Positions 250 to 61,974 of a stretch of DNA of 64,000 nt are shown piece after piece. Origin of the DNA: Octopus bimaculoides (taxonomy: Eukaryota); assembly GCF_001194135.2 (NCBI RefSeq), contig NC_069005.1, positions 31,112,793 through 31,176,792 of the forward strand, read 5' to 3'. How positions within the stretch are numbered: position 1 is the first letter of the stretch; each line of letters begins with the position of its first letter. Below the pieces are notes generated by a model that was not told the origin of the DNA, did no database searches, and saw only the letters and a list, made by a program, of their open reading frames with translations. Both the position numbers and the translations under genes were made by a program.

Positions 250-450
250 TTACTCTTTTCAGTCATTTGACTGTGGCTATGCTGGAGCATCGCCTTTAGT
301 CGAGCAAATCGACCCCAGGACTTATTCTTTGCAAGCCTAGTACTTATTCTATCGGTCTCTTTTTGCCGAACCGCTAAGTTACGGGGACATAAACACACCA
401 GCATCGGTTGTCAAGCGATGTTGGGGGGGGGGACAAACACAGACACACAA

Positions 451-485
<35 letters not shown>

Positions 486-582
486 NNNNNNNNNNTGCCG
501 AACCGCTAAGTTACGGGGACATAAACACACCAGCATCGGTTGTCAAGCGATGTTGGGGGGGGGGACAAACACAGACACACAA

Positions 583-625
<43 letters not shown>

Positions 626-6536: not shown

Positions 6537-7287
6537 TGTTAAATGTCTGTTTTTGTCATTATTGTGTAGACTTGATGTCTCCAAAAAAAAAAAAAAATAG
6601 ACATATTTGTCTGTCTATTAATATTGTCATTTACTTTTAAGAAAATTTTATAAATATATTTATGAAAGGAGAAGACAAACAAGAAATAAATGGGTCAGGT
6701 GGTGGTGGTGGTGGTGGTGGTGGTGGATGAAAGAAGTGGGGGTAGGATGAAACTGGGAATTGTATGAGGTAAGGTAAATATTTAATTTGATTTCCAGGTA
6801 GGGGTTGAGGTACAAAGACAACCACAATGCAGTTGTTGGGGGAAGAGGGGACGCGGTTCGCGAATGAAAGTGGGTTTTATGAAAAAATCTGTGCTGCCAT
6901 TTGTGTTCATTGTATCTTCTATCTTTGCTGGTCGGCAGAGGTGAAAACAAGTTTTAGTCAGCCATATTTGGTGACATTTCCTGCGAGAAAAGCAGCTTAG
7001 GAATGCCAAACAAGTGTAAACATTACAACTTAAAAGACACACACACACACACACACACATGCACATACACACATTTAATATTGAAATGAATTAAAATTAA
7101 AAAGCTATTTCAGTAATACCTATGGTGGAAGTTGTGGTTGAGATGGAGGCAGTGGTGGTGGTGGTCGTGGTGGGAATCAGCATTAGCAATTAAATTAAAA
7201 GAGTCTGTTTGCCCGACATCTCCAGTACATTTGAAGAAACTAATGTAACGTGTCATCGTATAATACATACTTATATACATACATACA

Positions 7288-7650
7288 TATATACTTGAAG
7301 GCTCTGAATTTACCTTCAAACGAGGAACAAAATTTAAACTCAAAACCAATTTCTCTTGTTCCTCTGGTAACCTCATTTATGTCCTCACATGCGCAGGTTG
7401 CCAAAACTTCTATATCGGACAGACGAGCCTCCCGTTGCATAGAAGAGTAGCAGTCCATAAAGAACAAATAAATCTCCCTCAATACCGCCAAATTCCACTC
7501 AGTGGCCATATAGACTCTCGCGCCAGAAACAAAAACCCTAAATTCCTTATATTCCCTTTCTATCAATGTAAAGACAGAATCTCCACACAAGAAAGAATCA
7601 ACAAGAAGAATCTTTTCATAGAGAAATTCCTACCATTTCTTAACACACAT
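7288..7650 (+). mobile_element. Penelope-like retroelement 3' fragment encoding a GIY-YIG endonuclease (stop-free, about 120 aa, runs into a gap)
   Basis: Extending ORF 7435 upstream in frame gives YILEGSEFTFKRGTKFKLKTNFSCSSGNLIYVLTCAGCQNFYIGQTSLPLHRRVAVHKEQINLPQYRQIPLSGHID...ERINKKNLFIEKFLPFLN. It contains the C-x3-N-x-IY-x3-C-x2-C-x3-YIG-x-T-x5-RR-x3-H motif typical of PLE endonucleases. Confidence 0.9.
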
Positions 7651-31642: not shown

Positions 31643-32319
31643 ATGCATGTACATGTTTATATGAATTTGTATGTACATATATACAAATATATACATATGT
31701 ACATGTATGTATATATATATATTTACATATGTACAAATATATACATATATATACAAATGATTATAGATATGTATATGTGTATGTATATATATATATATAT
31801 ACACACGCGCACACATTTGCATACATAAATATATATATACCTTCACATACACATTTGCATACGCATGCTTTTTCTAATGCATACATATGTATGTACCTTC
31901 ACATGCACACATACACACAAATATACAATCCTTATTATATACAAATATTTAGATGTCAAGATGGCGGTAGTTTATGGAAGGGACTAAGACCTGGGATAAT
32001 ATTTACATTAATGAATCACATTGAGAGTGTCTGTTTGTCCCCGCAGATCCAAAACATATATACACAAACACCTAGCAACACGCACGCGTACATAGACCGA
32101 CATGCATGCACGTAAACATCCACAAACACACATGCGCACGTTATAGGCTATAAAATTTTATATGAAGTCTTAAAGCCATTTTACTGCTACGCGTTTTCTG
32201 TACTCCCTATTCTCCTCTCCACTCCCTTTTTTTTTGTTATTCTACCCTGATCTTTCCATCATTGTTCATTTCTGTTGAATATTCTAATAGTCTAAATAGC
32301 TCATCATGTATCTGGCTTC

Positions 32320-32475
32320 CTTTGTTGCTCGAGCAGTATTGACGTCATCGTTCCTGCCTTTCTGTCTGTCCGTGTGTCTGCCTGGTTTCCCTCTCCCCTT
32401 CGCTTCTCCGTACTATATCTGCGCGAAAAACATAGAATTTTTCAGCTTGGGCTTCTTCAGTTGTTTGTCGTGACT
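32320..32475 (+). promoter_or_regulatory. CpG-rich candidate promoter/5'UTR with CRE (TGACGTCA, 32340-32347), TATA-like CTATAT (32413) and Inr-like TCAGCT/TCAGTT
   Basis: About 9 CpGs in 160 bp against a CpG-poor background. CTATAT lies about 30 nt upstream of the TCA(32444)GCT initiator-like site; a perfect TCAGTT is at 32457-32462. Confidence 0.4.
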
Positions 32476-32496
32476 ATGGGTGCAGTTGCAGCCTCT
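32476..32496 (+). CDS. Candidate first coding segment MGAVAAS (possible N-myristoylation-type MG start), phase-0 intron
   Basis: ACTATGG Kozak context, followed by |GTAAGT at 32497-32502; the protein is not identifiable. Confidence 0.35.
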
Positions 32497-32597
32497 GTAA
32501 GTAAGAGGTTCAATTCAGAATCTGGGGGTTCTTTGGCAGCCCCCCCCCTAACCCAGATGTAACCCAGATGTTTGACTTATGAGCACGATGCCATCTT

Positions 32598-32813
32598 TTA
32601 CTTGTTTCAAGTCATTGGACTGCGGCCATGCTGGGGCACTTGAAGGGTTTTGGTTGAACAGATTGATTCCAGTGCTTATTTCTTAAGCCTGTTACTTGTT
32701 CTGTTGGTCTCTTTTGCCAAACCACAACATTACAGAGATGTAAACAAACCGAGACAGGTTGTTAGGTGATGGTTGGGGACAATCACAAACACAGCCGTGC
32801 GCGCGCACGCACA

Positions 32814-35140: not shown

Positions 35141-36495
35141 GGTTAAAATAAATCTTTTCTCTTTTACTTGTTTCAGTCATTGGACTGCGGCCATGCTGGG
35201 GCACCACCTCAAAAAGTTTTTAGTAGAACGAATCAACTCCAGTACTCTTTTTTTTTTTTTTTTTTAAGCCTGGTATTTATTCTATCAGTCTCTTTTGTCA
35301 AACTGCTAAGTTACAGGGACATAAGCAAACCAACACTGGTTGTCAAGCTGTGGTGGTGGATAAACACAGTCTGGTACTTATTTTATTGCTCTTTTGCTGA
35401 ACTGCTAAGTTACAGGGGAATAAACACAGACACTGACACAAACAAGTTTCCTTAAGTAGGATTTGAACCCAGAGTGCAGAGACTTCATACAAATACTGCG
35501 AAACACTCTAACAATTCTGCCAATAACATTGATGTTATAAGACAAAACATAATTATAGCCTTCGACTGACATGGGTTTTTCTTTCTAACTACCACATACA
35601 TGTACATATGTTGACTGTTTAATATAGTAATAAATAATAACGAATATACATTAGCTGTTTTATGAAGTAATCACTGCTAGACATGCTTTCTCCTACATGG
35701 CTCTCTAATTATCCTGCAAATGATGACTGAGATGAATTTAATCTGTTGCTATTTCCATAACTCAGCAGTAGCAAGTGTATGATTTAATAAAAATAGACAT
35801 ACAGACAGACACCCATATTCAGTGCTGCTGTGAAATTAGGTTGTGTCTTCAGATAGCAGGACTTTTGCAGTAACAGCTTGAAGTGGAGATCAAATCCATG
35901 CGGTTATCTCTTTCATTTTTCTTATTTGTTTCGGTCATTAACCTGCGGCCATGCTGCAGCACCGCCTTGAATTTTTAGTTGAATGAACTGACCCCGGCAC
36001 ATATTTATTTTGTTAAGCCTAGTACTTGTTCTGTTGATCTCTTTGTCAAACTGCTAAGTTACGGGAATGTAAACACACAAACACCGGTTGTCAAGACACA
36101 CACACACACACACATGTACACTCACATATGCAATTAGTTTCAGTTGAGCCCCGGTGTGGTGCCCCAAAATTGCTGGGTTTGCGCTGAAATTTGAAACCAA
36201 TATTTTAGGCTACATATCTATATAAAAAAAGTGAATCTTATACAAGAATGTAATGTATCTAGAGTTGTTTCCCCATACATGCAAATTAAGAAGAAAAAAT
36301 ATTGAATATTACTCATTGATGCAAAGCAGCAAGCTGGCAGAATCATTAGCATGCCAGGTCAAAGTAATAAGTACCAGTTGAATACTGGGGTTGATGTAAT
36401 TGACTCACTCCCTCCCCCAAATTGCTGGCCTTGTGCCAAAACTTGAAATCAATATTAATCATTGACTGATGTTTTGTTTTTTGTGATAACATAAG

Positions 36496-36690
36496 TTTGA
36501 TGTACTTTAACTGTATACTGTTAAATATGATCATTTACTTAATTGTATGATGTTTGATAAACTTTAATTGTATGATGTTTGATAGACTTTTACTGTGTAA
36601 TGATTGATAGATGTATAATGTTGCTTAGACTTTAACTGTGCTTCAATTGCATAATATTGGTTATACATTAACTGTATAACGTTTTAGTTA
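36496..36690. repeat. Degenerate 25-bp minisatellite (ACTTTAACTGTATGATGTTTGATAG), about 7 units
   Basis: Units start at about 36538, 36561, 36586, 36629 and 36665. Confidence 0.75.
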
Positions 36691-36739
36691 TTCAGTAAGA
36701 TATGAGCAATATAACTTTAAATATTTATGTATTCGGTGA

Positions 36740-36784
36740 CAAATGTGTTGTCATTTCTTTCTTCTTTGTCTTTTATAGGTAAGT
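36740..36784 (+). other. Candidate recursive splice site (ratchet point): polypyrimidine tract-TAG|GTAAGT
   Basis: GTCATTTCTTTCTTCTTTGTCTTTTATAG (AG at 36777-36778) directly abuts a perfect GTAAGT; 70-nt AG-free zone upstream. Confidence 0.6.
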
Positions 36785-53145: not shown

Positions 53146-53190
53146 CTTAACAAACTATATAATTCCTTCATCTTATTTGGTTAGGTAAGA
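53146..53190 (+). other. Second candidate ratchet point: TTAG|GTAAGA
   Basis: CTTAAC branch motif (A at 53150), TTCCTTCATCTTATTT tract, AG at 53183-53184, GTAAGA; 43-nt AG-free zone. Confidence 0.4.
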
Positions 53191-53947: not shown

Positions 53948-54145
53948 TTGTGTGTCTGTCTGTGTTTGTCCCCCCGCTATCGCTTGACAACTGATGTTAG
54001 TATGTTTATATCCCTGTAACATAGCAAATGAGACCAATAGAATAAGTACTAGGCTTAGAAAGAATAAGTCCCGGGGTCGATTTGTTCGACTAAAGGCGAT
54101 GCTCCAGCATGGCCTCAGTCAAATGGCTGAAACGAGTAAAAGAAC
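53905..54145 (+). mobile_element. SINE family B 3' half
   Basis: GCTTGACAACTGATGTT...AAGAATAAGTCCCGGGGTCGATTTGTTCGACTAAAGGCGATGCTCCAGCATGGCC. Confidence 0.85.
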
Positions 54146-56235: not shown

Positions 56236-56605
56236 AAAATTTTATTTCTGCTTTATCGCAGTCTTCAAGGTTCTCTCGGCATTATATATGTACCATACAT
56301 GTGGTCTTATATAACCTAAGGCCAGGCTGGGGCAGTGCCTTGAAGAATATTTAGTTGAATGAATTGACACCGATACCTTCTCTTTTTTTTTTTTTTTTTA
56401 AAACCTAGTACTTCTTCTATGAGTCCCTTTTGCCGAGATGCTAAATTACAGGGATGTAAACACACCAACACCAGCTGTCAAGCAGTGGTGGGAGACAAAC
56501 ACACATATATATATATGTGATCTTGAAGGGTTTGGTTAAACAAATGAAAGCGCTAATAAAGAATTGTCCAATATTCTGACTGCCTCCTTCTTAGTATACA
56601 ACATC

Positions 56606-60998: not shown

Positions 60999-61158
60999 TT
61001 GTGTGTCTATGTTTGTCCCCTCAACATTGCTTGACAACTGATGTTGGTGTATTTACGTCCCCGTAACTTAGCAGTTCAGCAAAAGAGACCGAGAGAAAAA
61101 AAGTACTAGGTGCTCCAGCATGGCCACAGTCAAATGACTTAAACAAGTAAAAGAATAA
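60800..61158 (+). mobile_element. SINE family B, near full length
   Basis: GTGGCTGTGTGGTAAGTAGCTTG...GGTTCCGGGTTCAGTCC...TGGCACCTTGGGCAAGTGTCTTCTACTATAGCC...CAGTCAAATGACT. Confidence 0.9.
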
Positions 61159-61974
61159 ATAGTTGATTATGCAACCTCCTCTCTTGTTTTTTGTTTCTTT
61201 TCTCTCTCTCTCCATCCCAGGGTGATGAGTGCCGTGCTATTTCACCACCAAGCCAGCCAGGTGCCCTCCCTGTACCCAGGAGCTACCTTGCTCAGATTCT
61301 GCTGTTTCCAATCCCTTTGTTTGATGATGTCTGTCCACAAATATCTTTTGGCACCTTCTTACTCTCTTTCCCTCCACACTTTCTGTCCGAATGATCTTGG
61401 GCAAAGTTACTCATGATACAGTGTATGTCCAGGTAAAGGATAAATACCCCCCTTCAGTCATGAATAACCATGATTGCAGGCCTGACACCCTAACAAGTGA
61501 GCCATGGGCTTGATTCCCGACAGCAAGTGTCTTTGGGCTTTTGGGTTTTCCAGTACTATAGCATTGTTATTCTGTTTTTCCAGCCTATTGCAAGATAATA
61601 GCTGCAACAACACTGAATTAAACAACTTAACAATGCACTGGCAAATACCACACCCATCTTTGCAACACAGCACTTAGTGCACTAAGCGACACAGTGATAC
61701 ACAATGTAATGCAGCACCACACTCATTCTAGCACACCAGTCACAGATGAGCTTGTGCAATCACGTGACCAGAGACTAATAAGCAGTGGTGTAGCCGAGAA
61801 TTAACGAGTCTTGGAATGCAAAGTGTTATGGGAGTCACAGAGCAGGAGAGCAAAGCCCATACAGTCATAATACCACTGGCAGCCGCAATGCAGTATCTCA
61901 AATACATGAAATAAACTACTTTCTCCCAAACCCACTATGATGTCCTCCCATCCCGAGAAACCCCAAATGACTTC

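What the first reader, a model, noticed from the sequence alone, without database searches (positions are those of the whole stretch)
36740..36784. Textbook recursive-splicing ratchet point (zero-length exon) in a probable cephalopod giant intron
Seen: a 25-nt polypyrimidine tract ending TAG, immediately followed by a perfect GTAAGT, after a 70-nt AG-free zone. It is the only AGGTAAGT I found on either strand, in unique sequence 4.3 kb downstream of the candidate first exon. Known: AG|GT ratchet points allow stepwise removal of long introns in Drosophila and vertebrates. I know of no description in cephalopods, whose introns are very long. Together with 53184 and 39767 it suggests a multi-step recursive intron.
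Basis: partly seen in the sequence, partly recalled or inferred. Interest (0 to 1): 0.75.

Follow-up and report, generated by a model that had tools for sequence, protein, structure and literature searches.

The report
Lone recursive-splice-like motif, function unproven
The sequence really does contain a perfect-looking "splice acceptor fused to splice donor" motif, but a motif this good turns up by chance in roughly 2-4% of windows like this one. Nothing available here shows that the site is inside a transcribed intron or is ever used, so it is a candidate and not a discovery.

Summary
AG lies at 36777-78 and GTAAGT at 36779-84. The 25 nt before the AG are 22/25 pyrimidines, the AG-free zone is exactly 70 nt, and T occupies -5 and -6. 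It is the only AGGTAAGT on either strand.

The 8-mer alone is not enriched (1 seen, 2.2 expected). The full acceptor+donor motif is a clear outlier in the window: score 14.9 against 7.7 for the next of 395 AGGT sites. Markov simulations and a permuted-hexamer control put the chance of such a site at about 0.02-0.04 per 64-kb window. By my extrapolation that means about a thousand chance copies in a Gb-sized genome.

Nothing shows that the site lies in a sense-strand intron. No coding exon, Pfam domain or homologue was found in 32-64 kb. The only support is a small CpG-undepleted island with a 7-codon ATG...GTAAGT "exon" 4.3 kb upstream. No donor-like site lies within 172 nt downstream, as a fly-type cryptic recursive exon would need. 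The companion sites at 53183 and 39766 score at chance level. The taxon, conservation and RNA evidence could not be tested.

My estimates are: chance, unused motif about 0.5; genuine ratchet point about 0.28; other splice use about 0.12. If genuine, it would be a new member of a known kind.

The parts
36707..36776 (+). AG-free zone of 70 nt upstream of the acceptor-like AG
   Evidence: Only 4.4% of + strand AG dinucleotides have >=70 AG-free nt upstream.
36737..36740 (+). Branch-point-like TGAC, with its A at 36739, 39 nt before the junction. A second one, TAAC, has its A at 36714 (-64).
   Evidence: This is a loose consensus match only, inferred and not tested.
36752..36776 (+). Polypyrimidine tract, 22/25 Y (18/20 in the last 20), with TT at -5/-6
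   Evidence: The acceptor PWM score of 11.8 is reached or exceeded by 4 of the 6,737 AG dinucleotides scored on both strands, counting this site.
36777..36784 (+). AG|GTAAGT: an acceptor dinucleotide directly followed by a consensus donor hexamer (the putative zero-length exon)
37036..37044 (+). Nearest decent donor-like site downstream, AAG|GTGGGG, 260 nt after the junction. It is the only candidate for the 3' end of a cryptic recursive exon.
   Evidence: No GT scores above 0 between +6 and +172.
32477..32502 (+). Candidate first coding exon end: ATG GGT GCA GTT GCA GCC TCT G (MGAVAAS), then donor GTAAGT at 32497
   Evidence: The exon side of the donor is poor (TCT|), giving a PWM score of 0.49. 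There is no homology or RNA support.
31801..32500 (.). Small CpG-undepleted island: CpG o/e 0.885 against 0.37 and 0.31 in the flanks. It contains TATAAAA (32149-55) and TGACGTCA (32341-48) and is a possible promoter.

Best explanation
The motif is most likely a fortuitous juxtaposition in non-coding, repeat- and microsatellite-rich eukaryotic DNA. One of the many T/C-rich tracts on this strand happens to end in TAG and to be followed by GTAAGT. On this reading it is a decoy, a pseudo splice site that is not used, or is used only as splicing noise. It has no role in removing an intron.

Shown: the motif exists and is rare but not extraordinary by chance. Inferred: that it has no function.
For: The core 8-mer occurs no more often than expected (1 against 2.18).

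The + strand of this window carries 126 separate tracts with >=18/20 pyrimidines, against 44 on the - strand. There are 105 acceptor-like sites (Y>=16/20 followed by AG) on the two strands and 48 GTRAGT hexamers.

Markov order-4 and order-6 simulations reach the observed score in 1.7-2.7% of windows. The permuted-hexamer control gives about 3-4%. Scaled to a 2-3 Gb genome, which is my extrapolation, this is on the order of a thousand equally good chance sites.

Shepard et al. 2009 (PMC2773006) report about 0.1 ratchet-like sites per 100 kb on the antisense strands of long introns in all 13 animals they studied.

No coding exon, Pfam domain or homologue was detected in 32-64 kb on either strand. 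There is therefore no positive evidence that the site lies in a gene.

No donor-like site lies within 172 nt downstream, whereas fly ratchet points carry a cryptic exon of about 50 nt (PMC8605326).

The companion sites score at or below the median best score of random windows.

The site would lie 4.3 kb into an intron of more than 31 kb. Fly recursive sites tend to sit near intron midpoints (PMC6110457).
Against: Within this window the site is a strong outlier: 14.9 against 7.7 for the next site. Its per-window p is about 0.02-0.04.

It carries features I did not select for: TT at -5/-6, found in 99.5% of fly ratchet points; a 70-nt AG-free zone; and a TGAC at -39.

It lies on the same strand as, and downstream of, an ATG...GTAAGT candidate exon inside the only CpG-undepleted island of the window.

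In all five invertebrates examined by Shepard et al., sense-strand ratchet motifs in long introns are 4- to 22-fold enriched. If this genome behaves like those, a sense-strand site this strong would more likely be real than not.
Confidence: 0.5

Rival explanations
1. It is a genuine recursive splice site (ratchet point). A + strand transcript starts near 32.2-32.5 kb. The first exon is spliced to the AG at 36778, which regenerates a donor (TCT|GTAAGT). That donor is then used to remove the next part of a long first intron, and nothing of the site remains in the mRNA.
For: All sequence-level criteria are met: AG|GTAAGT, 18/20 pyrimidines, TT at -5/-6, a 70-nt AG-free zone and TGAC at -39. The motif is rare by chance in one window. 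The candidate first exon and a CpG-undepleted island lie 4.3 kb upstream on the same strand. The first segment of 4,282 nt falls within the range of 2.6-63.6 kb seen in flies. No exon is detectable for at least 27 kb downstream, which fits a long intron. Ratchet motifs are enriched on the sense strand in all five invertebrates tested by Shepard et al..
Against: There is no evidence of transcription, strand or intron status. The candidate exon is 7 codons long with a poor exon-side donor context. No downstream donor lies within 172 nt for a cryptic recursive exon. The companion sites score at chance level. The site is far from the midpoint of the putative intron. On the order of a thousand chance sites of equal quality are expected in a Gb-sized genome. 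Whether this taxon uses recursive splicing at all is unknown: searches found no paper describing it.
Confidence: 0.28
2. It is an ordinary splice site of an unannotated exon. One option is the acceptor of a non-coding (5' UTR or lncRNA) exon running from 36779 to a donor such as 37039. The other is the donor of a short exon ending at 36778.
For: Both halves are individually strong. A donor-like AAG|GTGGGG lies 260 nt downstream. One frame is open across 36702-36778 (MSNITLNIYVFGDKCVVISFFFVFY).
Against: All three frames after 36779 hit a stop within 7 codons, so it is not the acceptor of a coding exon. The sequence upstream of GTAAGT is a pyrimidine tract with no usable acceptor of its own, and the open frame has no homologue or domain support. 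A real exon that begins with a perfect GTAAGT would itself be a recursive-type exon.
Confidence: 0.12
3. The motif is an internal part of a transposable element or other repeat whose other copies lie outside this window. In that case the motif is inherited and not locally evolved.
For: About 30% of the window is self-similar repeat. A SINE-like copy (35912-36132) and another repeat (36326-36481) lie just upstream, and a 25-nt minisatellite lies at 36539-36609.
Against: Positions 36482-36841 have no second copy in the 64 kb. The exact 26-mer was not found in the JGI metagenome contigs, which is a weak test.
Confidence: 0.07

Closest known systems
Drosophila intronic ratchet points (zero-nucleotide recursive splice sites; Ubx, kuz, osp, luna and others; Hatton 1998, Burnette 2005, Duff 2015)
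   Same: Juxtaposed polypyrimidine-AG|GTAAGT, TT at -5/-6 and a plausible branch point. The putative position is inside a long first intron. The distance from the upstream donor falls within the fly range.
   Different: There is no RNA evidence, no conservation data, and no proof of intron or strand. No cryptic-exon donor lies about 50 nt downstream. The base at -3 is T, where I recall the fly consensus as C. The site is not near the intron midpoint.
Vertebrate recursive-splicing exons (RS-exons; Sibley et al. 2015, as cited in PMC8605326)
   Same: An AG|GT site in the first long intron of a gene, with a possible downstream donor that could define an RS-exon (37039, +260 nt).
   Different: The downstream donor is only moderate (GTGGGG). 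Gene identity and expression are unknown. According to PMC8605326, only nine fully suppressed intronic sites were definitively noted in mammals, so motif matches there are mostly not used.
Pseudo or decoy splice sites in long introns and intergenic DNA
   Same: A strong match to the consensus with no evidence of use. It occurs at the background frequency reported for antisense strands, about 0.1 per 100 kb. It sits among many pyrimidine-rich tracts.
   Different: It is a rather better match than the typical decoy, at rank 1 of 395 by a wide margin.

Membership tests
Recursive splice site / ratchet point | 3' splice-site motif (pyrimidine tract, AG) directly abutting a 5' splice-site motif (GTRAGT) | tested here: met
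   18/20 Y, TAG|GTAAGT, best combined score of 395 AGGT sites.
Recursive splice site / ratchet point | TT at positions -5 and -6 (99.5% of fly ratchet points, Duff et al.) | tested here: met
   The sequence is cTTTTATAG|G.
Recursive splice site / ratchet point | Lies in the sense strand of a long (>10 kb) intron of a transcribed gene | tested here: inconclusive
   The only support is a 7-codon candidate exon and a CpG-undepleted island 4.3 kb upstream. No exon, domain or homologue was found in 32-64 kb. The composite protein searches are weak negatives.
Recursive splice site / ratchet point | Cryptic recursive exon closed by a downstream donor (about 50 nt in flies) | tested here: not met
   no donor-like GT scores above 0 within 172 nt. 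The first decent one is at +260. The PWM is generic and not trained on this species.
Recursive splice site / ratchet point | Motif conserved in related species while the flanks diverge | not testable with these tools
   No orthologous DNA could be obtained.
Recursive splice site / ratchet point | Exon-to-site junction reads, saw-tooth intron coverage, recursive lariats | not testable with these tools
Ordinary coding-exon acceptor | An open reading frame continues downstream of the AG | tested here: not met
   there are stops in all three frames within 7 codons of 36779.
U1 snRNA gene (the minus strand reads ACTTACCT) | Match to the U1 covariance model | tested here: not met
   no Rfam family reaches its gathering score anywhere in the window.

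The most novel reading that the evidence does not exclude
The site is a functional ratchet point in the first long intron of a gene whose promoter is the CpG-undepleted island at about 32.0-32.5 kb. The literature held here has no paper describing recursive splicing in any cephalopod or mollusc, so this would be a first example there. That in turn would suggest the mechanism is ancestral to bilaterians and is used to process very long introns in a large, repeat-rich invertebrate genome.
Probability: 0.25. Interest if true: 0.55.

Novelty: not a real feature. Interest (0 to 1): 0.25.

Why it matters
If the site were used, it would extend recursive splicing to a third major animal lineage whose neuronal genes are reported to have very long introns. 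It would also give a concrete locus for RT-PCR. The mechanism itself is well known from flies and vertebrates, and ratchet motifs are already reported as enriched in sea urchin, bee, beetle and mosquito. A specialist would therefore be interested but not astonished. As it stands, one motif match cannot carry that claim. The useful outcome is a calibrated estimate of the chance rate and a short list of decisive tests.

Tried and rejected
1. I tried to fetch orthologous or same-species contigs through a neighbouring ORF (36999-37334, minus strand). It had no exact record and no homologue.

2. Three further ORF look-ups found no record.

3. I ran composite queries of non-repeat stop-free segments. 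Seventy segments of >=48 aa from 32-64 kb and 53 segments of >=65 aa from 1-32 kb gave no hit at E<=0.001. These are weak negatives. The GIY-YIG ORF was inside the second composite, yet on its own it has 1,224 relatives and a Pfam match.

4. Pfam on 102 stop-free segments of >=40 aa from 32-64 kb on both strands found 0 families.

5. I tried to confirm the taxon. The best relative sits on a TARA ocean metagenome scaffold. A SINE string and MGAVAAS do not occur in the literature library. I recall the SINE-like repeat as typical of octopus genomes, but that is memory and not a test.

6. An exact 26-mer search of the JGI metagenome contigs found 0 matches.

7. The minus-strand ACTTACCT could have been a U1 snRNA gene. 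I rejected this because there is no Rfam hit.

8. I rejected the reading as a coding-exon acceptor because of the stops.

9. I checked whether the pyrimidine tract is a tandem repeat. Tandem Repeats Finder did not call it even at score 30.

Full report
**The observation**

The window reads ...CATTTCTTTCTTCTTTGTCTTTTAT AG|GTAAGT CACTG... with AG at 36777-78 and GTAAGT at 36779-84.

- The 25 bases before the AG are 22/25 pyrimidines, and the last 20 are 18/20.
- The previous AG is at 36705-06, so the AG-free zone is exactly 70 nt.
- T occupies -5 and -6.
- AGGTAAGT occurs once on the two strands together.

**Is it more than chance?**

The 8-mer alone is not enriched. Dinucleotide shuffles expect 2.18 copies, and 89 of 100 shuffles contain at least one. 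The extended motif is different.

- YYYYNYAGGTRAGT is found once against 0.10 expected.
- I scored all 395 AGGT sites on both strands with a generic metazoan acceptor+donor weight matrix. The numbers in the matrix are my own approximations and are not trained on this species. The site scores 14.9 and the runner-up 7.7.
- I simulated windows from Markov models trained on this window. They reach 14.9 in 0/300 runs at order 2, 5/300 at order 4 and 8/300 at order 6.
- I also ran a control that uses the real sequence. Among the 105 acceptor-like sites (>=16/20 Y followed by AG), 3 of the 89 other permutations of the letters of GTAAGT also occur directly after the AG. At >=18/20 Y, none of the 89 do.

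So p is about 0.02-0.04 per 64-kb window. That is notable for a single window. Scaled to a genome of 2-3 Gb, which is my extrapolation, it means on the order of a thousand equally good sites by chance. Shepard et al. likewise report about 0.1 ratchet-like sites per 100 kb on the antisense strands of long introns in thirteen animals (PMC2773006). The + strand here is also unusually rich in pyrimidine tracts, with 126 against 44 on the - strand.

**Surroundings**

The window is a draft eukaryotic assembly.

- It has 20 runs of N totalling 5.4 kb and 146 tandem-repeat rows.
- About 30% of it is self-similar repeat.
- CpG o/e is 0.35.
- It has no tRNA or Rfam match.

A SINE-like repeat lies at 35912-36132, another repeat at 36326-36481, a 25-nt minisatellite at 36539-36609 and CT-rich low complexity at 36842-36932. 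The segment 36482-36841 that holds the site has no other copy in the window.

**Is it in a transcribed intron?**

This is the crux, and I could not settle it. Two things favour the idea.

- It sits at the 3' edge of the only CpG-undepleted stretch of the window. CpG o/e for 31801-32500 is 0.885 against 0.37 upstream and 0.31 downstream, which is in the top 1-5% of 400-nt windows. The stretch contains TATAAAA (32149-55) and TGACGTCA (32341-48).

That looks like a promoter, but it does not fix the direction of transcription. Part of the CpG signal also comes from a CA/CG-type microsatellite.

Other evidence counts against the idea, or is neutral.

- The exon is only 7 codons long and its exon-side donor context is poor (TCT|, score 0.49).
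- No Pfam family matched 102 non-repeat stop-free segments of >=40 aa from 32-64 kb on both strands.
- A composite of the 70 segments of >=48 aa found no homologue.

Both negatives fit either a long intron or intergenic DNA. The composite search is also a weak negative. A GIY-YIG ORF (7264-7650) that was part of the second composite went undetected there. On its own it has a Pfam match of 25.2 bits against a cut-off of 22.6 and 1,224 relatives.

**Anatomy tests specific to recursive splicing**

- Branch-point-like TGAC has its A at -39, and TAAC has its A at -64.
- After joining, the regenerated donor would be TCT|GTAAGT, the same as the original.
- The first segment would be 4,282 nt. This is inside the fly range of 2.6-63.6 kb but well below the mean of 18 kb.
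- Fly sites tend to lie near intron midpoints. This one would lie in the first 14% of an intron of at least 31.5 kb.
- Current models require a cryptic recursive exon closed by a downstream donor, about 50 nt in flies (PMC8605326). Here no GT scores above 0 within 172 nt. The first decent one is AAG|GTGGGG at +260, followed by GAT|GTGAGT at +489.
- All three frames after 36779 stop within 7 codons, so the AG is not the acceptor of a coding exon.
- The companion sites do not support a multi-step intron. Site 53183 scores 7.73, which is below the median best score of random windows (8.0-10.4). Site 39766 scores 0.29, rank 18.

**External evidence**

Attempts to obtain orthologous or same-species DNA failed. 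The cephalopod origin therefore remains unverified. I recall the SINE-like repeat as typical of octopus genomes, but I did not test this.

The literature held here has no paper describing recursive splicing in cephalopods or molluscs. The only co-occurrence of the terms is in a reference list.

**Weighing**

The posterior depends mainly on an unknown: whether this taxon uses recursive splicing as flies do or as vertebrates do.

- In flies, 63% of introns longer than 40 kb have a site, and ratchet motifs are 22-fold enriched on the sense strand. According, sea urchin, bee, beetle and mosquito also show enrichment.
- In vertebrates, the sense/antisense ratio is 0.9-1.5 and very few fully suppressed sites are known.

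With about a thousand chance sites expected genome-wide, the site is probably real under the first scenario and probably chance under the second.

The local evidence roughly cancels. The promoter-like island, TT at -5/-6 and the AG-free zone count for it. The missing recursive-exon donor, the early position in the intron and the chance-level companion sites count against it.

My estimates are:

- chance, unused motif: about 0.5
- genuine ratchet point: about 0.28
- splice site of an unannotated ordinary or non-coding exon: about 0.12
- part of an unrecognised repeat: about 0.07

**Verdict**

The motif is real and well described, and it is a reasonable candidate. There is no evidence that it is used, and the broader story (giant intron, multi-step recursion, cephalopod) is unverified or unsupported. 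If genuine, it would be a new member of a known kind and not a new mechanism.

Noticed in passing
window 7264-7650 (+): A stop-free frame encodes a GIY-YIG nuclease domain (Pfam PF01541, 25.2 bits against a cut-off of 22.6). It has 1,224 relatives, and many match at the C-terminus of proteins of about 700-770 aa. My inference is that this is the layout of Penelope-like retroelements, so it is probably a retroelement remnant.
   Followed up: partly
window 31801-32500: This is the only CpG-undepleted island in a strongly CpG-depleted window (o/e 0.885 against 0.35 overall). It contains TATAAAA and a perfect CRE palindrome, TGACGTCA. It is a possible promoter, whatever the ratchet site turns out to be.
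   Followed up: partly
window 364-617: A 132-nt unit is repeated twice at 100% identity across a 10-N gap (486-495). It looks like an assembly duplication at a gap edge and not a biological repeat.
   Followed up: no
window 257-415, 32598-32762, 35164-35347, 35922-36095, 56312-56482 (+); 24720-24876, 40349-40443, 44008-44115, 53983-54139, 61030-61159 (-): There are at least ten copies of one SINE-like family (about 70-80% identical), in both orientations, often followed by a TG/CA microsatellite. Its translation gives the recurring string DCGHAGAPP.
   Followed up: partly
window 18420-18659 (-) and 20041-20247 (-): One frame carries a ...GRGRPRKTWDEV... motif that I recall from LINE/RTE-type elements. 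A second carries a CX2CX4HX4C zinc-knuckle-like string next to an N gap. Neither reached a Pfam threshold.
   Followed up: partly
whole window, + strand: There is strong strand asymmetry of pyrimidine-rich tracts (126 against 44 tracts with >=18/20 Y). T>A and C>G skews are stronger downstream of 32.5 kb than upstream (AT skew -0.093 against -0.043). The asymmetry is largely driven by CT-type microsatellites at 41.6-43.0 and 55-57.8 kb.
   Followed up: no
window 4253 and 5892 (-): Two identical 33-nt strings (GGAATAACAGAAACATACACAGAGCAGGTGAGA) lie 1.6 kb apart. They indicate a local segmental duplication or two copies of one repeat.
   Followed up: no
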